Positions 1-55,718 of a stretch of 62,664 nucleotides of DNA are shown one piece after another. Location of the stretch: assembly GCA_001179505.1 (NCBI GenBank), contig CDMY01000506.1, positions 1-62,664 on the forward strand. The letters are read 5' to 3'. Position 1 is the first letter of the stretch; each line of letters begins with the position of its first letter. The stretch comes from Vitrella brassicaformis CCMP3155 (lineage: Eukaryota; Protista; Chromerida). A program made the translations under genes and the position numbers. The notes beneath the pieces are model-generated. The model worked only from the letters and a program-made list of their open reading frames with translations. It made no database searches and had not been told where the DNA came from.

Positions 1-3000
1 GGTCCTGGTCTCATCCTCGCCCACACTTGCAATGCCCTTGAGCACCTCCTCCTCGCTCAGACGACAGGCGGCCATGACGCCGTCCCTTGGCGGTGCGTCG
101 TCCATGATTCGTGCTCGTTCCGCGATGAGCTTGAGTCCGTCCTCGAGGCTCATGACGCCGGCGACGGTGGCGGCCACGTACTCGCCCAGGCTGTGGCCCA
201 TGACCACATCGGGCGTCACACCACGGCTCCGCAGCAGCTCCGCCAACGAATACTCGACCGCGAAGATCAGCGGCTGGGAGAACCGAGTCTGGTCGACGAG
301 CTTCTGCATCTTTTGGCGCTCCTCCTGGTCGTCGCCCGGGAAGAGAACGTCGAAAGCCTTGATGGGCGCCATATAGCGGTCAAGGATGCCGATACATTGG
401 TCGAAGCTCTGCTGGAACACCTTGTCGTTCTCGTACAGCTCCTTGCCCATGTCCAGGTGCTGGGACCCCTGGCCTGTGAACAGAAAAGCCACTTTCTTCT
501 TCTCGGCCTTGACGGGCACATTGGCCGCCTCGGTGGACTTGGTCGCCGGAGGCCTGTCCACCGCGGGCGCCTCCTCGAGAATGACGTGGGCATTGGCGCC
601 ACCAAATCCGAAGGAGCTCACACCGGCGAGGAGCCGCCGGCCGGGGGGCGGTATGAGTGGGAGGGTCTCAGTGGGGAAGGCGACGGGGAGGCCCTCGATG
701 TCGATGTGCGGATTCAGGGAGCTGAAGCGGAGATTGGGGGGCGTCTGCTTCATCTGCAGCACGAGAACAGCCTTGAGCACACCCGCAATACCCGCCGCTC
801 CCTCCAAGTGGCCCATGTTGGTCTTGAGGGCGCCCAGCACAAGAGGGTGCTCCGACTCCCGCCCTCCCGCAAACACGGCCTTGAGCGCGCCCACCTCGAT
901 CGGGCCACCGAGGGACGTACCCGTGCCGTGCGTCTCGATAAAGTCGACTGATGATGGTTGGAGGCCGGCCTGGCGCAGCGCCGACCTGATGACCTGCTGC
1001 TGGGCCGGCCCGCTGGGGGCTGTCAGGCTGGCTGCCCTCCCCCCGTGGTTGACGGCCGTGCCTCTCAGGCAGGCCAGCACGCCCACCGAGTCGGCGGATG
1101 TGTCGGAAAGTCGCTTGAGGATTATGGCGGCCCCACCCTCACCACGAACATAGCCGTTGGCCGACGTATCGAATGTCTTGCATCGGGCGTCGGGAGCCAT
1201 CATGCGCGCCTTGCAGAACGCCACCGTAACTTGCGGGTTGAGCATCAGGTTGATGCCGGCCCCCACACACGTGCTGCACACGCCTCGTCGGAGGTTGGAG
1301 ACGGCGGTGTCGAGGGCCACGAGTGAGGATGAGCATGCCGTGTCGACCGTCATGGATGGCCCCTGGAGGCCGAGAATGTAGGAGATGCGGTTGCTGAGGA
1401 TAGATGCGGCGGCCCCGCTGGTGCTGTAGCTGCTCACGCTGAGGGCCGTTTGGTTCTGCACGTGGTGCCAATCGAAGGAGCAGCAGCCGACGAAAACGCC
1501 GATCTGGCTGCGCATGAGCGTCTGCCGCGAGTAGCCGGCATTGTGGAGCGCCTCGTAAGAGACTTCCAGCATGATGCGCTGCTGGGGGTCCATGGTCTTG
1601 GCCTCTGCGGGGCTGATTCGAAAGAAGGCGGCGTCGAACATCTCTGCGCCGTCGATGAAGCCCCCCTCCCGGATGTACATTTTGCCCTCCATGTCGGGGT
1701 CCCCATCGTAGTGCTCGTCGACGTTCCAGCGGGTCAGCGGCACCTCCACTATCGCATCGCCGCCGGTGCTCAACAGCTCCCACAGCGACTCCAGCGACGA
1801 GCTGCCGCCCGGCAGACGGCACGCCGCACCCACGATGGCGATGGGCTCGTCTGCCCTGATGCCGCCCACCAGTTTGCCGCCCTCTTGTGCGGCCTCCTCA
1901 ATGGCGCAGCCCTCCAGCTCGCCGACGAGGAAGTCGATGATGTCATTCGTCGTTGGGTAATTGAAAATAAGCGTCGGCTCGATGTGCAGCGACAGCGTCT
2001 GGGACACGTTCTCGGCAAACTCCACCGCACCAATGGAGTCGACACCCAGCTCGTGCAGAGGCGCGTCGAAGTCGAATGTGTCGGTGTTGCCCAGGATCTT
2101 GGCCGCCGACGCCAATACTGCTGACTGGACCATCTCCCTCCTCTGTCCGATGAAGAGGCCCTGGCCCGTTGCCTCCTCCTGTGTCGCAACGGAGCCGCCA
2201 GACGGCCTCGTCCGAGCAGCTGGGGAATCATCATTGTCTCCTCCTGCGGCACACTCGGCTACTGACGCCTCGTTGGTGGGTAGGTGAGCTGCTGCGGCCT
2301 GCTCCTCGTTGTCCGTGTCGGGCTCAGCCACAACCTCATCCCAGATGAGGCCCGCCAGCACCATGTTGAGGAGGAGCTCACGCGTCTTGAACCGACGAAC
2401 TTTGCCTGACGAGAGGCAGCGACAGAAGCCAAGGACAACAACGCTTGAATCTGACATTGTCTATCGGCATATGTGTACGTCAAATAGACGTACCTGCTGT
2501 TGTCTTTGGGATGGTTCTTGGTTCGAGCAGCCATATGTGGAAGACGGGAATCCCCACCTTGGCCGAGACGGCCTTGCATATCTCGCGGCCGACTTGCCTG
2601 TATTGAGCCCCTTTACTGGTGAACGCCTGCCACAGCCCCGAGAGCCATCCCAACGTCCCCGTCCCGTTGTCCATCTTGATCTCGACCGCCAGACCCAGCC
2701 GCTCGCGACCATCCACCTCCAGTGAGAACGCCGCCACGCACCCCTNNNNNNNNNNNNNNNNNNNNNNNNNNNNNNNNNNNNNNNNNNNNNNNNNNNNNNN
2801 NNNNNNNNNNNNNNNNNNNNNNNNNNNNNNNNNNNNNNNNNNNNNNNNNNNNNNNNNNNNNNNNNNNNNNNNNNNNNNNNNNNNNNNNNNNNNNNNNNNN
2901 NNNNNNNNNNNNNNNNNNNNNNNNNNNNNNNNNNNNNNNNNNNNNNNNNNNNNNNNNNNNNNNNNNNNNNNNNNNNNNNNNNNNNNNNNNNNNNNNNNNN

Positions 3001-4882
3001 NNNNNNNNNNNNNNNNNNNNNNNNNNNNNNNNNNNNNNNNNNNNNTGTCGGGAAGGTTGAAGTAGCCACGGGCCGTGCTGCCAGACATGACCCACACCTC
3101 GCCGCGACGGCCCTCTGGCAGCTCCTTCAGAGTCTCGGGATCAACAATTCGAACTGAAGGAAGCAGTCGGTGATCGACCGGCGTTGGTCATGGTGCGGTG
3201 TGTGTGTGTACCGTCTATCCCAGGGAAGGGCACGCCACATCCGACGAGCCTCTGGTAGCCGCCTGCGTCCATGTCAGCTTCATCCACCAACTCCACCACA
3301 CCCTGGCCACACACACAGTCGGATGGTTGTCTCGTGTGTAGCCAGCCCATTCGTTCATCATGTACTTGGCTCCTCAATTTTTTGGCGTCGACGTTGATGA
3401 TGAGCGGCTCGCTATCGATGCCTTTGCGGCCTGTCACGAACAGGGTGTTCTCAGCCAACCCATACGCGGGAACGAACATGCTTCGACGCACTCCTTTGCT
3501 CTCAAATTTCTGTTCAATAAGTCACATAGAGTGCGCACAGACAGCCAGGGTGCTCATGAATCCTACGTTCTGTCGACAGCTAGTTTGCTTGCCGCACGCA
3601 CGTACCTTGATGAAGTTGTCCACGGTGGCTACTCTGATTGGTTCTGCCCCGCACAGGAACCCCATGACGTGGCTGAGGTCCAGCTCGTGAAACACGCTGT
3701 CGGGCATCTTGCGCGTCACGAGCTCAAAGGCGAAGTTGGGCGCACCACTCACACACGCCTTGTAGCGACTCATGCCTGCGTGAATGCGAACGGCACACAG
3801 ACCAAAAGCCATGCATTCAGGTTAATCACCACGAGACTCGTGCAGACAGGCACCCCACCTTGCAGCCAGAGGTAGGGCTTCCTGACGAAGTCGAGCGGTG
3901 AGATCTGGAAGAGCTCACATCCAAAAAAGATGGGCGAGCAGAGGAAGCCGATGAGCCCCATGTCGTGGTAGACGGGAACCCAGGAGAAGAGCCGCAGCCG
4001 GTGGCCCCGCACCCGCTCGCTGATCTCGTGACGCTGCATCAGGATCTCGCGCGTTCTGGTGTACGTGATGTTGGGAATGGTCGGGTCGTCGATGTTGCTG
4101 TCACAGCCGGGGGCTGAGGCGCAGCAATGGACGTTGTGCAGCAGCGACCCGTGCGTGACCATCACCCCCTTGGGCGCCGCCGTCGACCCCGATGTGAACT
4201 GCAAAAAGGCAATGTCACTCAAGCCGATGGACGGGGGGGTGAAGGACGCCTCGGGCTTGTCGTCTGCGGCCGTCCGCTTGAATGCGTCGCTGGTGAGGAT
4301 CCACTCGATGGATCTCCACCTGTTGTCCTTGGNNNNNNNNNNNNNNNNNNNNNNNNNNNNNNNNNNNNNNNNNNNNNNNNNNNNNNNNNNNNNNNNNNNN
4401 NNNNNNNNNNNNNNNNNNNNNNNNNNNNNNNNNNNNNNNNNNNNNNNNNNNNNNNNNNNNNNNNNNNNNNNNNNNNNNNNNNNNNNNNNNNNNNNNNNNN
4501 NNNNNNNNNNNNNNNNNNNNNNNNNNNNNNNNNNNNNNNNNNNNNNNNNNNNNNNNNNNNNNNNNNNNNNNNNNNNNNNNNNNNNNNNNNNNNNNNNNNN
4601 NNNNNNNNNNNNNNNNNNNNNNNNNNNNNNNNCCTCGGTGAGATAGGCGCCGAGCCGCTGCACCTTCCTGAAGAGCTCCCTGTATGTGAACACCTCGGCC
4701 GGCTCCCCATTGCCGTCGAGCCATGTGATGGCGGGATGCTGTGGTATCTCATCCGCCCACTTGGCGAGGGCTGTGCCGAATGCCGACGCCCCATAAAGCT
4801 GGTGCAGCTGTGAGAGATCATGAGAGATTGGTCGGGGAGGGACCTCCATAGCGCTGATCGATGTGCTGTGAGTGTCGGCCAT
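1..4882 (-). CDS. Type I PKS/FAS with FAAL loading module: FAAL-ACP-KS-AT..., continues beyond the window start
   Basis: FAAL (4882 to ~2410): FLQFTSGSTAAPKGV, SWVPVYHDMGLIG, PAYGLAEN, GEVWVMSGSTARGYF, IPKTTAGK. ACP: LGVDSIGAVE (~2030). KS (~1860-560): EPIAIVG, MDPQQR, DTACSSS, HGTGT, GHLEGAAG, SSFGFGGANAH. AT: FLFTGQGSQ, GHSLGEY (~190). Several introns and two N gaps fall in the FAAL part. Confidence 0.96.
2746..3045. other. Assembly gap (300 N) within the PKS FAAL region
   Basis: Run of exactly 300 N. Confidence 0.99.
4333..4632. other. Assembly gap (300 N) within the PKS FAAL region
   Basis: Run of exactly 300 N. Confidence 0.99.
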
Positions 4883-11895: not shown

Positions 11896-14800
11896 TCATG
11901 TCCGTCTGATGGGCCTGACCTCCAAGCCGCGTGGCTTGTACCTGAATGCAATGGACGGAGGCAGGGAGGAGACACCACACCCATCGTGGGCATTGGCGTG
12001 GCTCGTTTGTGTGCCTCTCTCCCTCCCTCCCTCCCTCCCTTAAGGTTACGTGATCGAGAAATACGGCTCGGGCGGCTTCGTCACCTCAAAGACAAAGCGG
12101 CTGAACAGGGCCGCCATCGTCAAGCGAACCTGACCAGACAGACGAACAGACAATCCACACACACACACACACACAGTTGAGTGAGTGACAACCGTATACA
12201 TGTGCTGTCTGATGTGTCAGAATGACTGGCTGACCTCGATCATGGCCAGATTGGAGCCGATGCTGGTGGGTGGACGCCACAGAAAGAAACACACCCACAC
12301 AGGGCAGTGTTTGTTCCATTCAGATGTGGATGGTCTGTCTTGGGCTGGTGACTGACTGACTGACTGACCATGATCTTGGCGGGATGCTGAACGGCAGGAA
12401 CGTCTTGTTGTAGAGCTTCAGCTCCTCCTCGGTCGCCTCCAGCCAACGCTCTGGGCGAAACACCTTGCCGTCGCCCCATCTGACCACACACACACACACG
12501 CCCCGACACGGACAGGGACACATGAGACCCAGGAGTGTAGTGTGTTCGCGTGTATGCCTCTGTCTGTGTCGCGCCTCACATTCTGTCGTCTCTCATTCCG
12601 GCCAGAATGGGCGTGCCAATTTCGCATCCGCCAGGAATCCAATAGTCCACGCCGCGGGAGGTGACCTTGATGCCGCCCTCAGTCTTGCGGAAGCTCCCAT
12701 TCGACGCAACGGGTGTGCTGACAGACAGACAGACAGACAGACGTCACAATGCACACACGGACGGGTGTGTGTGTGCGTGTGGGTGTGGTCGGTTTCGGCA
12801 TCTGGCTTACAGTCTGAGGATCTCTTTGATGCACGCGTTGAAGTAGGGCAGCTGACTCAGCTCCTCGTAGGTGGGCAGCTGACCCGCGAAGCTGGCACCA
12901 TCCAGCTCCTGAACACCAGACAAACATAACACGATTTCACACTTGAAGATCGCTCTATCATCCATCCATCCATCAGGCTGAGTGACCTGTTGCATTTTCT
13001 TGAGGACTTGTGGGTTGGTGGAGAGGTGGTAAATGCCCCAAGAGATGGTGTAGCCCGTCGTGTCGTGCCTGCATCCATCAATGGACACATGGAATGAATG
13101 AATACATCATGAACAGCAGCGCTCGCCTCGCCAGCTGGAGCACACGCGTGTGCCTATTGTACGTGTATGTCTATCTATCTATCTACCCACCCGGCCCACA
13201 GCAGGTTGTAGATGTCGCAGATCTTCTCGAACTCACTACACAGACACACACACACACACACACACACATTCAGACACCAGACGACGAACGCATCGCATGA
13301 GGTTGTTTGTATGTATTGCTATCTGTGTGTGTGGCTGAGTCACTGACGACGGGTAGGGAGCCTTGTGGATGTATGCGATGACCGACGTGGTCTGCAGACC
13401 AACCACCCCACCCAAACACACAGACAGACACACACATGCGCACGCCCACACACCCACTGCACAGCGGCCATGCTTCTCACGTACGTCTCGTTTGTCGGGC
13501 GGTGTGTCGAGATAGTTCCTGTAGATCTTGTTGCACACGTGGCGGAACAGCCGCAGGGCCTTGTAGTACTTGCGCACATGACTCAGCCAGAACATGTAAG
13601 GCCTGCACATACACGGCGTACGCCAGCACATAGGAAGGAAGGCGATTCTCTGACCATGCGATGTGGGGTGGATGCGTGTGTACCTGAGTGGGACCAGGAC
13701 GGTGCATCTGGTTTCGTAAAAGATGACTTCGATTGCGTCCAGCACGGCCAACGCCTCGCCATTGCGCTTCTCGTCGAATGCGTGCAACGGATAGCTGACA
13801 CACAGACACACAGGCCACACACCGGACACGAATGAATGAATGAATGAACGAGCGGATGAGCTCTCGTGGGCACATACTTGAATGCGACTTCCCCGATCAT
13901 GTCGAGAGTGAAGCGGGTGGCCCACTCGGGCATGTTGATGGACTCGCCCTGCTCGGCCGCGCCATCGATGGCCTTGCAGAAATCGCCGATCACACGGTGG
14001 TAGATGGGCGTCTTGCTCACGAGGGTCTTGGTGCTGAGCCAAACAGGACACACACGAAACGACGACCATGGAGTCATCTCTCCGTCTGCCTCTCTGTCTG
14101 TCTGTCTGTCTGTCTGTCCCACTGCCCTTGCTACATACGAGAATGCCGGGCTGAGGGCCTTCCTAATCGCATGCCAATTCTCGCCAGCCGTCTGCACAAG
14201 ATCAGGAAGGAAGAATTGGCATGTCTTGTCTGCCTGTCTGTGTCGGTGGACTAGCTCAGGTTACCTTGCGCGTGATGATGCTCAACGTGGAGGTGAGGGC
14301 ATTCTCCTTGAAGAGATCGAACGCGTGATACTTGTCGCTCTTGTCGAGGCCGTCGCTGCAAGAAGCGAGATAGGCATCCACTCCAGGAAGGGACGAATGC
14401 ACAGATGACATGCAATCAGTGCATCTCACGGTCCGATGAGGGTGTCCCAGCAGGAGATGTCGGTACAGATGTATATCCTCTGGCCGAGGGGCAGCTGCAG
14501 GTAGAAAATGTCGCACCCGAGCTTGTCGCGCCATTCCTCATGCCTGCACACACAATCACACCCCACACAGGGAGTGAGAGAGAGCCACGTGCATGTGCTT
14601 GTGGGCAATAAGCTTTCTGTGCAAGGCTGTGTGTGGAGGGGGGGGGGGGGCNNNNNNNNNNNNNNNNNNNNNNNNNNNNNNNNNNNNNNNNNNNNNNNNN
14701 NNNNNNNNNNNNNNNNNNNNNNNNNNNNNNNNNNNNNNNNNNNNNNNNNNNNNNNNNNNNNNNNNNNNNNNNNNNNNNNNNNNNNNNNNNNNNNNNNNNN

Positions 14801-15316
14801 NNNNNNNNNNNNNNNNNNNNNNNNNNNNNNNNNNNNNNNNNNNNNNNNNNNNNNNNNNNNNNNNNNNNNNNNNNNNNNNNNNNNNNNNNNNNNNNNNNNN
14901 NNNNNNNNNNNNNNNNNNNNNNNNNNNNNNNNNNNNNNNNNNNNNNNNNNNGGGGGGGGGGGGGCGCTTCTTACATGTGCGGCTCTTTGCCTGCCATCAA
15001 GTTCTTCCACATAGTCTCCATCGACGTCGGCACGCCTACGAAAAGCACAGCACCATGCAATGACAGACAGTGATCAGTCTGCATGACTTGTGCGGCCATG
15101 CTCACGAGGGGGGTCACGCAGCTTTCGCCTCTCCTCTGCCGATATCTGGCGTGCGCCCTGCCGGCCGCCCTGCTTGCCATCCTTGGCTGCATGCTTGCGC
15201 CGCACCCGAATGAACTCCTCGAGGCCGACGAGGCAGACCACGCCGGCAGAGAGGGCGGCGACGAGGGGCAGCACGGAGGAGGCGGACTGGTCGAGGTTGG
15301 TGGTTGATGCCGGCAT
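11896..15316 (-). CDS. Cytochrome P450
   Basis: N-terminal hydrophobic anchor, C-helix WHAIRKALSPAF, I-helix AGHDTTG, ExxR (KEILRL), PERW, heme motif FSIPPRSCIG (spliced TG|C), C-terminus SITYKPRGLEVRPIRRT*. About 15 exons and one N gap. Confidence 0.95.
14652..14951. other. Assembly gap (300 N) flanked by poly-G
   Basis: 300 N between G runs, inside a P450 intron region. Confidence 0.99.
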
Positions 15317-30470: not shown

Positions 30471-30835
30471 CCAGAGCAATTAGTTCATGGGATGTGTTCA
30501 ATGGCACGGTTCAATGAGTAGGGCACATGCATTCATTCCACCGAACAAGTCTCATTTTTCTGTCCTCCTCAGCACGAACATGAAGTATATTGGCTCTCAC
30601 AGCCGCTGTCTGCGACGCAGCCGGAGCACTGACACGCACACACAGGAAGACATGCATGGGCCAGAAGCACACAAACACACACGAGAGCTCATGCACACGC
30701 GTTCGCGCACGTGCACTGCCGCTCCATCCTTCTCCTGAGAAGACAACACAGCACAGGAAGCGAAGCATGCATAAATGTCTGTGCGTCGTGATCGTGTACC
30801 CACCGTGCTGCGCTGCTTCTGTCTTCCCACCGTGC

Positions 30836-31505
30836 TTAGCGTCTAGCTAGCTGTGTCGCGGCCGCGATGGGCTGCACGTTGGGTCTCTCCGCCAAGTTGA
30901 GGACGCCGGCCACGCGGACGTGCTCAGCGGCAATAGCCGCCAAAATCGACTGGGGATACTGCGTCATCAGCACTTCTTGGGGATACTCGTAGTGGTCGTA
31001 CACGCTGACATGGCCGAATGCGCGCGTCTTGTACTCCACGATGTGCTTGAACCCTTCGCAGGGGCGCAGCGTGTATGGGACGTACGTCAGGTCGAGGCAG
31101 ACATGCCACTGGCCCCCGCCCATGTTGAGCGCCCGGATGACCCCTGTCTTCAGACAGCCTACAACACAGACAACGCACCAATGGATGCCCCGACGCTTCC
31201 CCCGTTCCCCACGAACCTGTCTGCTGTTGCTGCTGATGCTGCACAACAACGGCACCGACATTCATGATGTCCAGCCTCACGAGGGGAACGATGAGCCGAC
31301 AAAGGTCGACGGCGATGTCGCGCATCTCGGGCGTGGCCGCCTGGCCGACCGCTGTGATGCCAGCTTCGAGCTGCGCATCAGTGATCGTGCTGGGCAGATA
31401 AGGGTGACCCTCGTGGCGAGTCGGGTTGACCGCGAAGGTTGCGAAGCCACCTCCTCTGCCGGTCTGGGAAGGTGGGATGTACTGGTTGATCTCCTTCCGG
31501 GGCAT
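30836..31505 (-). CDS. Unknown protein 'A-left' (203 aa), outward gene of the palindromic cassette
   Basis: Exon 1 is 31505-31217, followed by a phase-1 intron and exon 2 at 31158-30836. MPRKEINQY...DLCRLIVPLVRLDIMNV.../GCLKTG...YTLRPCEGFKHIVEYKTRAFGHVS... Confidence 0.8.
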
Positions 31506-31530
31506 ACTTCAGAATCTGTAGTGGTCGCTG

Positions 31531-32240
31531 GCAGGATGTTGTTGTTTGCAGCCGGCAGGATGGCCGATCTTGGGCGTTTGCGCCGGACACCATCATAATT
31601 CAATGAAAAATTTCGCCGGCAATTCCGAGAAAAGGGTTGGCGGGAGCGGTTTCGCGCAAAAGGTGCTTAGCTAGCTCGCAGGCGTCATATGGGCGCCAAG
31701 CGAGGATGAGGTCCAAGCCGTCGCGAGTGCGCTGGTGAATCACACGAGGCAGCATTGGAACAGCCGGAGTCTCTTCAACATCGATAAAAAGGCCATCAGA
31801 GCTGATCCGGAAGCTCCCCTGCTTGCCGTTCCAAGGCCTGATGTGGGAGATCCTGAGCATCCAGCCTCAGGTCCAGCGCACGAGCCGGTGCCAGCTGCGC
31901 TGGAGGTGCCGCTCAACCCCCCCGCCGAGTTGTTCGGCCTCGAGTGCGCGGTGCGATTCGTGGAGCAGGGCTGCAAGAAGAAAGCAGACGACGGGAGAGG
32001 AAGAGCAACACAAGAGGAAATCGGTCAGCACATGCGCATGCAGACACATACACGCAAGCACGCGACATGCACTGACCTGCCCCACTGCACCAACTCCTTT
32101 CCTTGAAATGTGTGCAGGCAGAGAAGGCTATGTCATTTATCACGCCGCGCCGCCCGCTGACGCGTCCCAGCCCGCGACTATACGGCATGAGCAGCCACCG
32201 GCAACCACAGCGAAGAAAACGGGGAGACCAACAAACGACT
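31531..32240 (+). repeat. Left arm of a ~700-bp inverted repeat (bidirectional promoter plus 5' part of the inward gene)
   Basis: Reverse complement of 33820-34515, with about 12 mismatches in the first ~295 bp by manual comparison and indels further in. Confidence 0.95.
31637..31657. promoter_or_regulatory. Tandem E2F-like elements TTGGCGGGA and TTTCGCGC
   Basis: Match to the E2F consensus (TTTSSCGC; TTGGCGGGA) between two divergent start sites; mirrored at 34385-34409. Confidence 0.4.
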
Positions 32241-32368
32241 TCAACTCGATGCTTCAAGGCGTTGGCCATCGCCAACCCCACGCTGCCGCCAACGAGCGAG
32301 GGAGCAAAAGACGGCAAGGCACTGCGCAACACAACCCAGGAAGCACAGCAAATAGGGCACGTGGCTAA
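31687..32368 (+). pseudogene. Inward gene 'B-left': start-less chimeric copy of B-right
   Basis: ATA replaces the ATG of the right copy, with an in-frame TAG upstream. It shares SEDEVQAVASALVNHTRQHW...ELFGLEC.../GREGYVIYHAAPP, then diverges and stops at 32368. Confidence 0.7.
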
Positions 32369-32914
32369 AGGCAAGCAACTTTTCCGTCGTCCCAGTGTCG
32401 GCGAGGAGCTATGGATGGTGGGAGGACGAGGCGGTGATGTAGAGTTTATCCGCGACGGCAGCGGACACACAGTGGGCTCGACCTGGCGTGCTGCTGCAGA
32501 ATTGCAACGGACACATGATGTGGAGCAGGGCGTGGCGAGCGAAAAGCGGGATGGGCAGGAAAGGGCACGTTTTGTTGAGGGCCCTCCCACCTTCGATGAT
32601 TGCAGTGCGCGTGTGGGAGGGTGGGTGAGCGATGTGGGTAGGTAGCGAATGTCTTGTAGTTCCTGTCAATAGTTTAGATGTGAATGTGTAATCGACTTGG
32701 TCCCAACGCATGGACACCAGACAATCGACTGCCCTCAGCTGGGACTCCATACACTATCATAGACGTTACACATTTCCCCATCGCTCATCAGGTAAACAAA
32801 GAATCAACACAGCGGGCGATACCAGTGTCGCATTCATCCAGACTCATTCATCGCCGCATCACATGACCCTGACAGCCATCGCACAAGGCACCGAGATGAA
32901 AGTGAAAGCTTCTT

Positions 32915-34359
32915 CTAAGAATAACACGTACTGATAGCTTTTGCAATCATCCGCTTGCCGGCGTGGCGGCAGTTGTCGGTGTCGAAATCGTAAACCAGGC
33001 CGCCCACTTTTTTCAGGTCTCCCACTGTGACGCCTCTTATGGCCTGATGCTTCTGAGGGGAAAAATTCCATCGCTCCTGAGCCAGCCCCACCTTACTCGT
33101 GACGATTGTGTCGCCTTTCATATAGCCGTAGCCTTTCCCCTTGTGAATGAGCCATCCCTCGTTGCCGTAGCGTATCTTGATGCCCCTGTCGACGAGCGTG
33201 ACGATAACACCGTAATGCTCACACGACTCACCAGACGCGCAGGGATTGCACGGTGGGTCTGCAGGTCGGCTGACGAGCTGAATGGTCTCAATCTCGCTTT
33301 CTTCAAGAACCATGACCTCAAGATGGCTCAGCTCATAGGGAGGCCGTCGACGAATGGGAAAGGACTGAAGCAGCCGACGCCATGGCTCCCCACATACGGA
33401 GACGGGCCCATGCTGCTGTGCCAGTGGGGCGTTTGCCTTGAATCGTTTCCTGACCAAGAACAAGCGCCGCAAATATGCTGCACTCTTTGTTGATATTCTC
33501 GGCACACCTGCATGGCTGAGGTAGAGAAGCAGCAGCTGCTGCAGATGCTGCTGCCTGAGCGACAGGTGCTTCTCGGCTCTGAAAGGTGCAGAGAGATAAT
33601 GATGCAGATGCACAAAGAGGGAGCGACACTCTGACTGCTCTTCACCTCTTCTTCAGCCTTTCGACAGGGGTGCCTTTTTCTGTCGTCGCTCCAGTAGTAA
33701 GTATCGCAATGCAGGCACATTTCCAGCCTCATGAGGCTCCCGCTGCCAGGCGTGTATTCGTAAGGCAGCGGCAACCGTACCCCTCCCCGTCGCACGACAT
33801 GTGCTGCGCAGCTCAGATCGTTTAGTGCTCTCCCCGTTTTCTTCGCTGCGGTTGCCGGTGGCTGCTCATGCTGTGTGGTCGCGGGCTGGGACGCGTCAGC
33901 GGGCGGCGCGGCGTGATAAATGACATAGCCTTCTCTGCCTGCACGCATATCAAGGAGATGCAGTCGGGGAGTCAAGGTTGCGTGCTTGCGTGCGTGTGTG
34001 TGTGTGTCTTTGCTGTGTGTGCGTGTGTGCACGTGCTGACCGATTTCCATTTGTGCTGCTCTTCCTCTCCCGCCGTCTTCTTTCTGCAGTTTACTGAATC
34101 CGGCATACTCGAATATCGCCGCGCACTCGAGGCCGAACAACTCGGCGAGGGGGTTGAGCGGCACATCCAGCGCAGCTGGCACCGGTTTAGGCGCTCGAAC
34201 TGAGCCTCGAGGCCTTGCGGCAAGCAGGGGAGCATCAGGGTCAGCTCTGATGGCCTTTTTATCGATGTTGAAGAGGCTCCGGCTGTTCCAATGCTGCCTC
34301 GTGTGATTCACCAGCGCACTCGCGACGGCTTGGACCTCATCCTCGCTTGGAACCCACAT
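32915..34359 (-). CDS. Inward gene 'B-right': unknown N-terminal domain + C2HC Zn finger + permuted NlpC/P60 (LRAT/PPPDE-like) peptidase
   Basis: MWVPSEDEVQ... start; CLHC-x11-HPC (33717-33664); C-terminal HYGVIVTL...WLIHKG...GGLVYDFDTDNCRHA with His-His-NC order. Internal splice sites are approximate. Confidence 0.75.
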
Positions 34360-34515
34360 GCCGCCTGCGAGCTAGCTAAGCACCTTTTCCGCGAAACCGC
34401 TCCCGCCAACCCTTTTCTCGGCATTGCCGGCGAAATTTTCCATTGGATTATGATGGTGTCCGGCGCAAACGCCCAAGATCGGCCATCCTGCCGGCTGCAA
34501 ACAACAACATCCTGC
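33820..34515 (-). repeat. Right arm of the ~700-bp inverted repeat
   Basis: Reverse complement of 31531-32240; homology ends sharply at 34515. Confidence 0.95.
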
Positions 34516-34538
34516 TTGCATTTTGCGTTGTTGGAGAA

Positions 34539-35317
34539 ATGGCTGGCTGGCTGAAAGAGGCGATACAGACAGCGACGACGAACGCGATGTCCCACAACAT
34601 CGAGCGTGGCGGCCACAGCGCTCTGATCAAGAGCGAAACGACCACCAGCATCTCGAACGTCATCCTTCCTGCGGACGACGCATACGCGTCCATCAGCATG
34701 ATGGCGAGCATCGTCAAGGTTCACGGCGTGAGTCCGGAGGCCCTTTCCGGAGTGGTGCAGGACGGCACGGCTGCTGTGCAGGCCTACGTGGCTAAGTCCA
34801 AGGTGCCCATCGGAGAGGCAGAGTTTGCCATCGCCTGTCAAACCGCCCTTTCCATCATCCAAAAGGACGTGCTGGGCGTCTTCGTGAGCTTCTACAGCAT
34901 GCTGTTCCATCAGGCGAGGCCAGAAGGTACTCCACAGATGCATGCAGGATATCTTGTGCAGGCACAAGTATATCGGAAGGGTTCTTGTGTGCAGATGGGT
35001 TGTACATGTTCAGCGTTTTGGCGGCAGCTGACCCCCACTTCCCCGGCCGACTCATTGTCGACGTCAAATTCGGACACGCCAACTTCACGCTGCCGCTCAG
35101 CGTGCGCATCCTCACCATCACCGACAAGAAGAGCGCCGTATTCGGTCTGTTCAGCAAGACAAGCACGACTTCGCAGCTGGTGTATGAGCCCACCCCCGTC
35201 ACAATGCAGCGGTTGGAGGCGGTCAACCTCAGCCTGCTCAACGTCCTCCACGGTGACACCCTCCGCGCGATCAAGGATGCAAAGGACCAGACGAGGGCCG
35301 TGCAAGACACAGCCTGA
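34539..35317 (+). CDS. Unknown protein 'A-right' (236 aa), outward gene and distant paralogue of A-left
   Basis: Exon 1 is 34539-34926, followed by a phase-1 intron and exon 2 at 34995-35317. MAGWLKEAI...IACQTALSIIQKDVLGV.../DGLYMFSV...FTLPLSVRILTITDKKSAVFGLFS... Confidence 0.82.
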
Positions 35318-35389
35318 TGGATGCGCGCGCAGTGGATGGTGGGGTGGTGGGGTGGATGGTGGATGGTGGATGGTGGGGTGGGTGGGGTG

Positions 35390-35689
35390 NNNNNNNNNNN
35401 NNNNNNNNNNNNNNNNNNNNNNNNNNNNNNNNNNNNNNNNNNNNNNNNNNNNNNNNNNNNNNNNNNNNNNNNNNNNNNNNNNNNNNNNNNNNNNNNNNNN
35501 NNNNNNNNNNNNNNNNNNNNNNNNNNNNNNNNNNNNNNNNNNNNNNNNNNNNNNNNNNNNNNNNNNNNNNNNNNNNNNNNNNNNNNNNNNNNNNNNNNNN
35601 NNNNNNNNNNNNNNNNNNNNNNNNNNNNNNNNNNNNNNNNNNNNNNNNNNNNNNNNNNNNNNNNNNNNNNNNNNNNNNNNNNNNNNNNN
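35390..35689. other. Assembly gap (300 N) after a G-rich (GGTG/GGAT) tract
   Basis: Run of 300 N. Confidence 0.99.
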
Positions 35690-54150: not shown

Positions 54151-55718
54151 CTAGAAACGAAGTCCTAGCGTCCTCATAATGCGATCAACGAGCCCGTCAA
54201 AGAAGCCCTTTCTCTTCCTCTTCTTCGGCACCTCGTCGCTCTCAAGGTAGACAACGATAGCGTCCAGCAGCACCTTGTCTCGGTCGTCAGATGCCTCCCA
54301 CAAAGTCAGCCCTTCCACACCATGCTCCACAGCCAATGCCAACTTATCTTTCAACGAGTGATCGTCGTCGTAAGCGACGAATGTGCCCCCGAGAGTGTCG
54401 TTTGGCGATGAGGGCGGTTTGTAGAGGTAGGGCACACGTGTCTTGTTGTTGTAGTGGCGCGTGAAGCCGCTCGTGCTGGGCATGTAGTTGGCCGCTATGT
54501 CCCAATACGCTGACATGACATCCATCCATGTGTGTATGTGTGTGGTGAGAGAGAAGGAGACACACCCGTACAGTGTGTGTGTGTCTCACAGACCGACCGA
54601 GAATTCCGGGCTCTTGCTGCCGTGTGCCGTTGCCGGCAGCAAGGAATGGCTGATAGAGGCCGTCTTTGTCAGGCCCTTGCTGCACCCCCGAATATACCCT
54701 CCCATACAAGGGCAGCCCCACATTTATCATCTCGCCGTCGCAGCCAAACGCGATATAATGCTGCACAGGAGAGACAGACAGACAGACAGAGAGGGAGACA
54801 CCACGGTTTCCATGCTCCCCTGAAAGCCACCTACCTGTACAACGTCTTCCACAGTGAGCAGCTCCTTTCCGACTGTTGGGTCATCGGGGTCTGCGTGAAG
54901 GGGGCTGTCGTAGTCGGTTATGTTATCCCACGGGCCGTGCAAGTCATACGTCAGGAGACTGATGAAGTCCAGAAAAGACCCAGCACAAAGCTCGGATATC
55001 GGCGTGTTGTTGCGCACCTGCACACACATGACAAAGGTGGATGGATGGATGGATGGAGGCAGAGAGAGAGAGAGAGAGAGAGGGACCAGTTCAGGTCAGA
55101 ACTTGCCTCTAGCGGGGCGACCCCAGCTGTGATCGATATGTCGAGATGTTTGTTGTCCTGATTGGCATTGAAGGTCTGCCGCAGCTCCTTCAGGAATGTG
55201 ATGTAGTTGACCCAGTCGTCTGGTGAGGACGGAATGTGCGTGTCGCCCCCTCCCCCAGGAAACAGCCACTCAAAGTTCATGCCGTCCAGGTCAGCACGCC
55301 TGATCAATTCAACTGTCGAATTGATGACCTAAATGAGAAGAAAGGCCGCAGGAGAACCAAGAAAGCGAAACGATGTACCATCTCTCTCTCTCTCTGTGTG
55401 TGTGTGTGTGGGGGGGNNNNNNNNNNNNNNNNNNNNNNNNNNNNNNNNNNNNNNNNNNNNNNNNNNNNNNNNNNNNNNNNNNNNNNNNNNNNNNNNNNNN
55501 NNNNNNNNNNNNNNNNNNNNNNNNNNNNNNNNNNNNNNNNNNNNNNNNNNNNNNNNNNNNNNNNNNNNNNNNNNNNNNNNNNNNNNNNNNNNNNNNNNNN
55601 NNNNNNNNNNNNNNNNNNNNNNNNNNNNNNNNNNNNNNNNNNNNNNNNNNNNNNNNNNNNNNNNNNNNNNNNNNNNNNNNNNNNNNNNNNNNNNNNNNNN
55701 NNNNNNNNNNNNNNNNGT

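What the first reader, a model, noticed from the sequence alone, without database searches (positions are those of the whole stretch)
30836..35317. Palindromic four-gene cassette built on two inverted copies of one bidirectional promoter
The layout is A-left <- [arm 31531-32240 -> B-left] spacer [B-right <- arm 33820-34515] -> A-right. The arms are near-identical over the promoter (about 12 differences in ~295 bp). Identity stops abruptly ~25 bp before each outward ATG (31505 and 34539). The outward genes are highly diverged paralogues. Old coding divergence with young promoter identity points to an ancient inverted duplication of an A-B divergent pair whose control region is homogenised by arm-to-arm gene conversion, or was recently overwritten. 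The result is a co-regulated unit pairing an unknown protein family with a cysteine-peptidase-fold protein. A speculative reading is an effector plus activating protease, analogous in logic to pore-former/protease immune pairs.
Basis: partly seen in the sequence, partly recalled or inferred. Interest (0 to 1): 0.85.

Follow-up and report, generated by a model that had tools for sequence, protein, structure and literature searches.

The report
Inverted promoter-plus-gene-start duplicate in Vitrella
In the alga Vitrella brassicaformis a 0.7-kb piece holding a two-way promoter region and the start of one gene is present twice as mirror images, so two unrelated-looking orphan genes sit behind the same control DNA; one copy is only a start-less leftover of the gene, so this looks like a modest, fairly ordinary rearrangement scar and not a four-gene module.

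Summary
The inverted repeat is real. Its arms are 31531-32238 and 33818-34515, with 84% identity overall and 96% over the outer 298 nt. Similarity stops 25 and 23 nt before the two outward ATGs.

The window is Vitrella brassicaformis CCMP3155, and RNA contigs give spliced models for all four units.
- **B-right** is an intact 411-aa gene. Its C-terminal domain has a permuted papain-like (NlpC/P60, LRAT or PPPDE type) fold with His-His-Cys in place.
- **B-left** is not a gene copy. It has ATA where B-right has ATG, leaves the repeat in exon 2 and stops 43 codons later. It has no enzyme domain, but it is still transcribed and spliced.
- **A-left and A-right** are orphans with no significant similarity. 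However, their last coding exons are both exactly 320 nt.

Synonymous divergence is about 0.13-0.19 along the whole arm, so the arms are not young. The 156-bp intergenic part is only 3% diverged, which fits selection on both promoter copies better than recent conversion.

My best reading is a single partial inverted duplication, possibly a staggered-break micro-inversion. Ancient duplication with arm-to-arm conversion remains a live rival.

Earlier notes from this scan list similar inverted gene-start copies elsewhere in this genome.

The parts
31531..32238 (+). Left arm of the inverted repeat. It holds the 156-bp upstream region (31531-31686), B-left exon 1 (31687-32023), the intron (32024-32117) and part of exon 2 (32118-32238).
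   Evidence: Divergence by segment is 3.2%, 4.9%, 18.7% (plus 30 gap columns), 37% and 5.8%.
33818..34515 (-). Right arm. It is the 5' end of the intact B-right gene plus its upstream region.
30495..31505 (-). A-left, an orphan gene of 203 aa (P0002). Exons are 31505-31217 and 31158-30804, with the stop at 30836-30838. A 69-nt intron (30735-30803) lies in the 3'UTR.
   Evidence: RNA contig joints in two libraries. The model is identical to the annotated 'unnamed protein product' of Vitrella brassicaformis CCMP3155. No Pfam, PHROG or PDB match.
34539..35317 (+). A-right, an orphan gene of 236 aa from the first ATG. It is annotated as 220 aa (P0001) from the second ATG at 34587. Exons are 34539-34926 and 34995-35317.
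   Evidence: A 68-nt GT..AG intron is joined in both RNA libraries, and it has the highest depth of the locus. No family match.
32834..34359 (-). B-right, an intact gene of 411 aa (P0003). Exons are 34359-34041, 33938-33646, 33578-33508, 33449-32932 and 32868-32834 (stop codon included).
   Evidence: Three introns are joined in RNA contigs. The first intron is inferred from the frame and from the homologous spliced intron of B-left. The model equals the annotated protein.
32932..33449 (-). Exon encoding the permuted papain-like (NlpC/P60, LRAT or PPPDE type) domain. His306 is at 33215-33217, His330 at 33143-33145 and Cys388 at 32969-32971.
   Evidence: 25 distant homologues share the H-x-G-V, L-I-H-K-G and D-N-C-x-H-A motifs. 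AF2 gives pLDDT 78 and pTM 0.69.
33664..33717 (-). Cys-x2-Cys ... His-x-Cys stretch in B-right exon 2 (aa 181-198), a possible small zinc-binding element.
   Evidence: Read from the sequence only. Not tested.
31687..32371 (+). B-left, a transcribed and spliced but start-less and truncated copy of the B 5' end. It has ATA at 31687-31689 in place of ATG, the intron 32024-32117, and leaves homology at about 32238. The reading frame ends with TAG at 32366-32368 (the end coordinate here runs one codon past it).
   Evidence: A left-specific spliced contig is in X8: depth 7.6 over 31770-32022, joined to 32118. No remnant of the B C-terminal domain is found in the spacer.
32239..33817 (.). Unique 1,579-bp spacer. 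It contains the B-left tail, the B-right 3'UTR and B-right exons 2 (part) to 5.
   Evidence: contigs X1 record 4, X3 record 11 and X9 record 22.
31506..31530 (-). Unique 25-nt leader between the left arm and the A-left ATG.
34516..34538 (+). Unique 23-nt leader between the right arm and the A-right ATG.

Best explanation
**What is there (shown).** A segment of about 0.7 kb is present twice, as mirror images 1.58 kb apart. It consists of a compact head-to-head control region (156 bp) plus the first exon, first intron and 40% of the second exon of gene B.
- The right copy is the working 5' end of B. B encodes a 411-aa protein whose C-terminal domain is a permuted papain-like Cys-His enzyme fold of the NlpC/P60, LRAT or PPPDE type.
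- The left copy is a leftover partial duplicate. Its start codon reads ATA, it leaves homology in exon 2 and it stops 43 codons later. Most of it evolves nearly neutrally. It is still transcribed and spliced, probably as a by-product of the two-way promoter.

**Age (shown).** Synonymous divergence is about the same along the whole arm (0.13-0.19), which points to one event of moderate age.

**Mechanism (inferred).** The simplest mechanism is a partial inverted duplication. One candidate is a micro-inversion with a staggered break across this segment, which flipped the intact B gene and left a filled-in copy of the promoter-plus-gene-start behind. A fold-back template switch would give the same picture.

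**Consequence (inferred).** Two orphan genes, A-left and A-right, each start 25 or 23 nt beyond a copy of the same control region. That 156-bp region is far better conserved than synonymous sites, which implies that both copies are used as promoter or 5' leader.
For: - **Repeat anatomy and uniqueness:**
- **Independent DNA support:** one DNA contig spans both inner arm ends.
- **Gene models:** spliced models from RNA joints, identical to the annotated Vitrella proteins.
- **B-left is a remnant:** ATG is replaced by ATA, the ORF is truncated, and no trace of the C-terminal domain remains in the spacer.
- **Divergence within the arms:** dS is 0.143 in the first 47 codons and 0.191 in the rest; omega is 0.19 and 0.89.
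- **Upstream region is conserved:** it has 5 differences in 156 nt, against 16 of 103 synonymous sites (Fisher P = 7e-4). The probability of seeing 4 or more synonymous differences in exon 1a at the upstream rate is 0.018.
- **No shoulder of homology:** nothing residual lies outside either arm end.
- **Precedent for the mechanism:** inverted duplications of 46 bp to 1.9 kb at one or both inversion breakpoints, attributed to staggered breaks, are described in Drosophila (PMC1885836).
- **Genome context:** Vitrella has a median gene spacing of 92 bp and an excess of head-to-head pairs (PMC4501334).
- **B fold:**
Against: - **Equal exon lengths.** The terminal coding exons of A-left and A-right are both exactly 320 nt and phase 1.
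- **Matching ATG spacing.** The ATGs lie 25 and 23 nt from the arm ends.
- **Weak global similarity.** A global alignment of the two proteins beats shuffles (z = 2.8, about 1% of shuffles), while cross-half controls do not.
- These three points would be coincidences if the A genes are unrelated. They fit an old duplication of the whole A-B unit better.
- **No outgroup.** No related locus was found that could show the ancestral order.
- **Limits of the read data.** The contigs are short-k assemblies, so outer junctions and a possible flip-flop of the middle segment could not be phased.
- **Small counts.** The synonymous-site counts are small (4 and 12 differences).
Confidence: 0.55

Rival explanations
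1. An ancient inverted duplication copied a whole A-B divergent pair. The A copies diverged beyond recognition, B-left lost its 3' part by deletion, and the control region plus B 5' end were kept alike by arm-to-arm gene conversion or one later overwriting.
For: - The last coding exons of A-left and A-right are of identical length (320 nt, phase 1).
- The ATGs are almost equally far from the arm ends, 25 and 23 nt.
- The global alignment has z = 2.8 with negative cross-half controls, and the best insignificant BLAST segment is nearly co-linear, offset by 2 residues within exon 2.
- Arm boundaries are sharp, as in palindromes maintained by conversion.
Against: - The A proteins show no significant similarity (E 1.5-2.3), and language-model neighbours differ between them.
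- The arms are 13-19% diverged at synonymous sites, so conversion is not ongoing.
- It requires conversion to have lasted long enough for the A genes to lose all similarity and then to have stopped.
- It also requires an extra deletion of the B-left 3' part, of which no trace remains.
- Synonymous sites in the 96% block are not younger than the rest.
Confidence: 0.27
2. B-left is a functional unit in its own right. It could be a short protein started at a non-AUG codon. Alternatively it could be a regulatory RNA whose overlap with, or complementarity to, the B-right mRNA tunes B expression.
For: - B-left is transcribed and correctly spliced.
- Its first 47 codons have omega 0.19.
- An RNA contig joins B-right's last intron to sequence reaching 32149 inside the left arm. 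The two transcripts, or B-right's own 3'UTR, could therefore form 90-139 bp of duplex with B exon 2.
Against: - There is no in-frame AUG before residue 163, and an in-frame stop lies 12 nt upstream of the ATA.
- Omega is 0.89 and there are indels over the rest of the copy.
- The omega of the pair also reflects constraint on the B-right lineage. The test for omega below 1 is marginal (P = 0.045).
- The contigs are unstranded, so the antisense overlap is not proven.
Confidence: 0.1
3. The palindrome is an assembly artefact, for example a fold-back chimera or a mis-joined repeat.
For: - The scaffold has five 300-N gaps, one of them 72 nt after A-right.
- No contig spans a whole arm.
Against: - The two arms differ by 16% and both versions are recovered without mismatches in runs from different samples and years.
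- One DNA contig covers left-arm end, spacer and right-arm end.
- Left-specific and right-specific spliced RNA contigs both exist.
Confidence: 0.03

Closest known systems
Inversion-associated inverted duplications from staggered breaks (Drosophila melanogaster group; Ranz et al. 2007, PMC1885836)
   Same: A non-repetitive segment, here 0.7 kb, is duplicated in inverted orientation at the two ends of a segment. One copy is a partial gene fragment. No transposon lies at the ends. The size falls within the reported range of 46 bp to 1.9 kb, and duplication at only one breakpoint is common in that study.
   Different: The putative inverted segment is tiny (about 2.3 kb, one gene), against kilobases to megabases in flies. 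No outgroup shows the ancestral order, so the inversion itself is inferred. The organism is a chromerid alga.
Palindromes kept alike by arm-to-arm gene conversion (for example primate Y-chromosome palindromes; from general knowledge)
   Same: Inverted arms flank a unique spacer, arm boundaries are sharp, and genes lie in or next to the arms.
   Different: The arms here are 16% diverged overall and 13-19% at synonymous sites, whereas actively converting palindromes differ by far less than 1%. One arm carries only a dead gene fragment, and the arms are 0.7 kb, not tens to hundreds of kb.
Bidirectional promoters of head-to-head gene pairs (frequent in Vitrella; Woo et al. 2015, PMC4501334)
   Same: The start codons of A and B lie 181 nt (left) and 179 nt (right) apart on opposite strands. 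All units are transcribed. The shared non-coding region is under constraint.
   Different: The whole region is present twice and serves two different outward genes. One of its two inward 'genes' is a non-coding remnant. Transcription start sites are not mapped, and expression levels differ 4-5 fold between A-right and A-left.
Permuted NlpC/P60-type papain-like enzymes: LRAT and H-REV107 (PLAAT) acyltransferases, picornavirus 2A H-box/NC proteins, PPPDE/DeSI (Peptidase_C97) and the T6SS effector TseH
   Same: The order is His ... His ... Cys with an 'NC' motif at the Cys. The predicted alpha+beta fold matches these proteins and nothing else above background.
   Different: No Pfam model reaches threshold for B-right. 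It belongs to a small unnamed family of mostly short, secreted-looking proteins. B-right adds about 270 N-terminal residues with a Cys/His cluster. Whether it is a peptidase, an acyltransferase or a lipase is unknown.

Membership tests
Permuted NlpC/P60-like (LRAT, H-box/NC or PPPDE type) papain-fold enzymes (B-right) | Catalytic residues in permuted order: an N-terminal His (H-box), a second His or polar residue, and a C-terminal Cys in an 'NC' motif | tested here: met
   His306 (EHYGV), His330 (LIHKG) and Cys388 (DNCRHA) are present. Asn and Cys are nearly invariant in the alignment of 25 sequences (B-right plus 24 distant homologues).
Permuted NlpC/P60-like (LRAT, H-box/NC or PPPDE type) papain-fold enzymes (B-right) | Fold similarity to solved members | tested here: inconclusive
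   Foldseek finds no hit with E below 0.06. VIA-align gives Z 6.2 for Aichivirus 2A, 6.0 for TseH and 5.0 for H-REV107, with unrelated rows at 3 or below. One chain of a Euglena respiratory supercomplex that I could not identify scores 5.6 among them, and Z below 8 is a middling score. Atlas models reach TM 0.52-0.68 to PPPDE, TseH and LRAT clusters. The results are consistent but moderate.
Permuted NlpC/P60-like (LRAT, H-box/NC or PPPDE type) papain-fold enzymes (B-right) | Match to a curated family model (PF04970 LRAT, PF05903 Peptidase_C97 or PF25218 TseH) at the gathering score | tested here: not met
   B-right has no Pfam hit even at E of 10 or below. Four of its homologues hit Peptidase_C97 weakly, best E 0.027.
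Permuted NlpC/P60-like (LRAT, H-box/NC or PPPDE type) papain-fold enzymes (B-right) | Enzymatic activity dependent on the Cys | not testable with these tools
   This needs biochemistry.
Inversion-associated inverted duplication (staggered-break model) | Non-repetitive inverted duplicates directly flanking the rearranged segment, with one copy a partial gene | tested here: met
   The arms flank the 1,579-bp spacer. B-left ends where the arm ends. The sequence has no other copy in the window.
Inversion-associated inverted duplication (staggered-break model) | An outgroup shows the un-inverted order with a single copy | not testable with these tools
   No related locus was found in the metagenome collection by protein or by DNA pattern. 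The runs found carry near-identical sequence.
Palindrome homogenised by arm-to-arm gene conversion | Arm-to-arm divergence far below neutral divergence since the duplication | tested here: not met
   dS between the arms is 0.18, the intron is 37% diverged, and synonymous sites in the most similar block are at 0.14. Only the non-coding upstream part is at 3%.
Palindrome homogenised by arm-to-arm gene conversion | Arms more alike within a genome than orthologous arms are between genomes | not testable with these tools
   No second species or diverged strain is available.
Bidirectional promoter pair | Head-to-head genes less than 1 kb apart, both transcribed | tested here: met
   181 nt (left) and 179 nt (right) lie between the A and B start positions. 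Spliced RNA contigs exist for A-left, A-right, B-right and B-left.
Bidirectional promoter pair | Mapped divergent start sites and correlated expression | tested here: inconclusive
   The contigs are unstranded and break at repeat k-mers. Depths in two libraries are 62, 13, 15 and 5-8. No condition series is available.
A-left and A-right as one protein family | Significant sequence similarity | tested here: not met
   BLASTP best E is 1.5-2.3. Local alignment scores lie within the shuffle range.
A-left and A-right as one protein family | Shared gene structure | tested here: met
   Both have two coding exons with a phase-1 intron, and the second coding exon is 320 nt in both.
A-left and A-right as one protein family | Shared fold | tested here: inconclusive
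   The AF2 model of A-right has pLDDT 38. The Atlas model of A-left has pTM 0.22. Feature neighbours differ: Evf, Cyt-toxin and DUF2303 clusters for A-right, YomN and HK97-gp10-like for A-left. All are below the reliable range.

The most novel reading that the evidence does not exclude
A-left and A-right are deep paralogues of a lineage-specific family. The duplicated two-way control region has been kept alike by selection, or by occasional conversion, as a shared switch. The B-left remnant RNA, complementary to the B-right message, tunes the papain-like enzyme, which in turn processes or acylates the A proteins. Together this would be a compact, self-contained regulatory palindrome. If inverted copies of gene starts are as frequent across this genome as earlier notes suggest, Vitrella may use break-and-fill inversions at promoters as a regular way to rewire gene starts.
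Probability: 0.08. Interest if true: 0.65.

Novelty: new member of a known kind. Interest (0 to 1): 0.3.

Why it matters
This locus is a clean, datable example of how a small inverted duplication can place one control region in front of two different genes and leave an expressed gene stump behind. It comes from a compact genome related to apicomplexan parasites, where promoters are poorly understood.

The 156-bp region is conserved in two copies, at 3% divergence against about 17% at silent sites. That makes it a ready-made candidate for a minimal chromerid bidirectional promoter.

B-right also marks a small, unnamed branch of the permuted papain-like enzymes. By itself, though, the locus is an ordinary product of genome rearrangement. 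Nothing shows a functional A-B module.

Tried and rejected
- **Family scans.** Pfam on exon pieces and on full proteins gave nothing. PHROGs gave only one hit for A-left at E = 0.049. PDB sequence searches gave nothing useful.
- **Homologue searches.** Word-indexed searches for A-right, A-left and the B N-terminus returned only the proteins themselves. Each search scored only the first coding exon, so relatives of the second exon of either A protein, and of the middle part of B, were not sought this way. That leaves 'orphan' and 'no further A-B pairs' unproven.
- **A-right fold.** The single-sequence AF2 model was unusable at pLDDT 38, so no fold comparison of the A proteins was possible.
- **Atlas leads for the A proteins.** These were Evf, Cyt-toxin and DUF2303 for A-right and YomN and HK97-gp10 for A-left. 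All fall below the tool's reliability marks and were not used.
- **Remnants of a full B-left.** tblastn of the B C-terminal part against the window found none.
- **Related loci.** A protein-pattern scan and an exact 29-mer from the arm in metagenome contigs both came back empty.
- **Neighbours of B-domain relatives.** One sits alone on an animal chromosome, and another was not on record. This gave no A-B linkage information.
- **'Recent conversion of the outer 298 nt'.** Rejected as the main reading, because synonymous sites there are as diverged as elsewhere.
- **Chimeric contigs.** A DNA contig (X3) carries left-arm letters in the right arm. An RNA contig reaches into the arm with two 'other letters'. 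I treated both as k-mer path switches, not as evidence for conversion.
- **Two calls failed on frame errors and were repeated.**

Full report
**1. Observation**

A repeat search and a self-BLAST of the window find one long repeat only. It is an inverted pair with arms at 31531-32238 and 33818-34515, 84.2% identical over 730 aligned columns.
- The outer 298 nt are 96% identical, with 12 differences.
- Identity is lower in the middle (87%, 84%, then a poorly alignable CA-rich stretch).
- It rises again to 94% over the inner 139 nt.
- The outermost 69 nt are identical. Similarity then vanishes at once, 25 nt before the ATG at 31505 on the minus strand and 23 nt before the ATG at 34539 on the plus strand.

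**2. Organism and gene models**

The window has N gaps, about 58-60% GC, and open frames broken by short GT..AG introns. Protein searches identify it as Vitrella brassicaformis CCMP3155, a chromerid alga. This gave exact splice joints.
- **A-left (minus strand):** exons 31505-31217 and 31158-30804, 203 aa, with a further 69-nt intron in the 3'UTR.
- **A-right (plus strand):** exons 34539-34926 and 34995-35317, 236 aa from the first ATG. It is annotated as 220 aa from the second ATG.
- **B-right (minus strand):** five exons from 34359 to the stop at 32834-32836, 411 aa.

My models for A-left and B-right equal the annotated proteins P0002 and P0003.

**3. B-left is not a gene copy**

- At the position of B-right's ATG, the left arm reads ATA (31687-31689).
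- An in-frame TAG lies 12 nt upstream, and no in-frame ATG follows for more than 160 codons.
- The copy leaves homology in exon 2 at about 32238 and stops at 32368, with none of the enzyme domain.
- tblastn finds no remnant of that domain in the spacer.

B-left is nevertheless transcribed and spliced. One X8 contig (depth 7.6) covers the left-specific, 19%-diverged part of exon 1 and joins 32023 to 32118 with GT..AG ends.

The locus therefore holds three genes and one expressed stump.

**4. Is the layout real?**

- X1 record 4 (32149-33907, no mismatch) runs from the copy-specific inner 90 nt of the left arm, through the spacer, into the copy-specific inner 90 nt of the right arm.
- Left-specific and right-specific arm contigs are recovered in runs of different samples and years.
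- Outer junctions cannot be phased, because the outermost 69 nt are identical and the contigs come from 31-mers.
- One X3 contig on the right arm carries the five left-arm letters at 34351-34389. With shared stretches longer than 31 nt on both sides, this is what a graph path switch looks like, so I draw nothing from it.

**5. Age and constraint within the arms**

Divergence by segment:

| Segment | Divergence |
|---|---|
| Upstream 156 nt | 3.2% |
| First 142 nt of exon 1 | 4.9% |
| Rest of exon 1 | 18.7%, plus 30 gap columns |
| Intron | 37% |
| Exon 2 part | 5.8% |

- Nei-Gojobori estimates give dS 0.143 and omega 0.19 for the first 47 codons, and dS 0.191 and omega 0.89 for the rest.
- Silent sites are thus about equally diverged everywhere (Fisher P = 0.77). 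What varies is amino-acid constraint.
- The non-coding upstream region is significantly less diverged than synonymous sites (P = 7e-4).
- Four synonymous differences in exon 1a are more than the upstream rate predicts (P = 0.018).
- The 'young promoter' is therefore better read as a conserved promoter. Both copies of the 156-bp region appear to be under selection, while the arm as a whole dates to one event at dS of about 0.17.
- Four of the twelve differences in the outer block cluster within 11 nt around the lost B-left start codon.

**6. Are the A genes paralogues?**

Directly, no similarity is detectable.
- BLASTP best E is 1.5-2.3 and the DNA flanks show nothing.
- Neither protein has any family, PHROG or PDB match, or any homologue in the word-indexed search.
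- Language-model neighbours differ between the two, and all lie below the tool's reliability marks.
- AF2 on A-right alone failed (pLDDT 38). The Atlas model of A-left is poor (pTM 0.22).

Indirectly, three things give pause.
- Both genes have one phase-1 intron, and the second coding exon is exactly 320 nt in both.
- The ATGs lie 25 and 23 nt from the arm ends.
- Global alignments beat shuffles (full length z = 2.8; C-halves 2.2; N-halves 2.3). The cross-half controls do not (z = -0.8 and -0.3).

I noticed these points after the fact, and they are not proof. I put deep paralogy at roughly 40-50%.

**7. What B-right is**

- An exhaustive HMMER search with the C-terminal exon finds 25 weak relatives, E from 5e-8 to 1e-3.
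- They are mostly short proteins with hydrophobic N-termini. They share the motifs H-x-G-V, L-(I/V)-H-K-G and (D/N)-N-C-x-H-A.
- Four of them hit Pfam PPPDE/Peptidase_C97 weakly.
- The AF2 model built with this alignment has pLDDT 78 and pTM 0.69.
- Foldseek gives nothing significant against PDB or Swiss-Prot.
- VIA-align's top rows are Aichivirus 2A (Z 6.2), TseH (6.0) and H-REV107 (5.0, twice). An unidentified Euglena respiratory-supercomplex chain (5.6) also sits among them. Unrelated rows are at 3 or below.
- The Atlas gives TM 0.52-0.68 to PPPDE, TseH and LRAT clusters. It also gives feature matches to PPPDE, TseH, CLN5, IcsB and Lnb clusters.
- With His306, His330 and Cys388 in the permuted order, a papain-like NlpC/P60-type Cys-His enzyme is well supported.
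- Its chemistry (peptidase, acyltransferase or lipase) and its substrate are unknown.
- One relative lies on an animal chromosome with no informative neighbour.

**8. How the locus arose**

*Model A (preferred, about 0.55 as a single partial inverted duplication).* A 0.7-kb segment was copied in inverted orientation once.
- A specific version is the staggered-break inversion described for Drosophila. There, fill-in of long overhangs leaves inverted duplicates of 46 bp to 1.9 kb at one or both ends of the inverted segment (PMC1885836).
- Un-inverting arm plus spacer gives a coherent ancestor: A-left head-to-head with an intact B, and A-right downstream of B. The mirror-image alternative would break B.
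- This explains, with no extra event, why B-left ends exactly where the arm ends. It also explains why no homology shoulder exists outside the arms.
- It implies that A-right acquired this control region at the event.
- It does not explain the equal exon lengths and ATG spacing of the A genes. A-left and A-right could still be old inverted paralogues flanking B.

- It explains the A-gene coincidences.
- It needs conversion to persist long enough for the A genes to lose all similarity and then to stop for dS of 0.17.
- It also needs a clean deletion of the B-left 3' part.

No outgroup locus could be found to decide between the models.

**9. Function of the arrangement**

- Vitrella has a median gene spacing of 92 bp and an excess of head-to-head pairs (PMC4501334). 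A two-way control region with 181 nt (left) or 179 nt (right) between the A and B start positions is therefore normal for this genome.
- Conservation of both copies implies that both drive or lead transcripts.
- The k-mer depths are A-right about 62, B-right about 15, A-left about 13 and B-left 5-8, in both libraries. Sharing the sequence does not give equal output, and co-regulation is untested.
- Nothing supports the effector-plus-protease idea beyond adjacency.

**10. Relation to earlier notes of this scan**

These notes are unchecked leads.
- The same genome has several other reported inverted copies of gene starts or whole bidirectional promoters. One of them was read as a staggered-break inversion, and that note led me to test the model here.
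- Two notes on this same stretch concern the A 'family' and the 'Zn-finger-linked permuted NlpC/P60' reading. I tested both: the first is not supported by sequence, and the second agrees with my fold evidence.

**11. Verdict**

This is a real, well-defined inverted duplication of a promoter plus a gene start. It is of moderate age, has one dead but expressed copy, and both copies of its control region are conserved. It is a new example of a known kind of rearrangement product, not a four-gene functional cassette.

Noticed in passing
31591-31596 (-) and 34450-34455 (+); uORFs 31378..31596 (-) and 34450..34554 (+): In the A direction both arms carry two adjacent upstream ATGs (ATGATGG). They open an out-of-frame uORF that overlaps each A start codon. 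Whether they lie inside the A leaders depends on unmapped start sites. One RNA contig reaches 34435.
   Followed up: partly
31603-31674 (+) and 34372-34443 (-): In the B direction there is a 23-codon uORF in frame with B. It ends at a TAG 12 nt before B's start codon. Its three differences between the arms are all amino-acid changing.
   Followed up: no
32149-32867 joined to 32931-33448: An RNA contig links B-right's last intron junction to sequence that runs through the spacer into the left arm. Either B-right has a 3'UTR of about 700 nt, or the B-right and B-left transcripts converge and overlap. In both cases 90-139 bp of near-perfect duplex with B exon 2 could form.
   Followed up: partly
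34351-34389: A DNA contig of run X3 laid on the right arm carries exactly the five left-arm letters here and right-arm letters on both sides. This is most likely a 31-mer path switch, but a conversion polymorphism between isolates is not excluded.
   Followed up: partly
31685-31695 (left) / 34351-34361 (right): Four substitutions cluster within 11 nt around the B start codon in an otherwise 96%-identical block, including the ATG-to-ATA change.
   Followed up: partly
34539 versus 34587: The public annotation starts A-right at the second Met (220 aa). An in-frame ATG 48 nt upstream has A at -3 and G at +4, and it lies within the RNA contig.
   Followed up: partly
30735-30803 (-): A-left has a spliced 69-nt intron in its 3'UTR, seen in both RNA libraries.
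   Followed up: no
P0004-P0028; L001:6001-6820: The B C-terminal domain defines a small family with no Pfam model. Its members are short proteins, many with signal-peptide-like starts, seen in animals (one on a 36.7-Mb chromosome next to an Auts2-like gene). According to Atlas clusters, members also occur in nematodes, arthropods and giant viruses.
   Followed up: partly
whole genome (earlier notes s1-197160, s1-226962, s1-248667, s1-218431, s1-201933): Several other inverted copies of gene starts or bidirectional promoters are noted in this genome. A census could show whether this is a characteristic rearrangement mode of Vitrella.
   Followed up: no
2746-3045, 4333-4632, 14652-14951, 35390-35689, 55417-55716: There are five scaffold gaps of exactly 300 N. 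The fourth begins 72 nt after the A-right stop codon, so the A-right 3' end is incomplete in the assembly. RNA and DNA contigs continue with other letters from 35361-35363.
   Followed up: no
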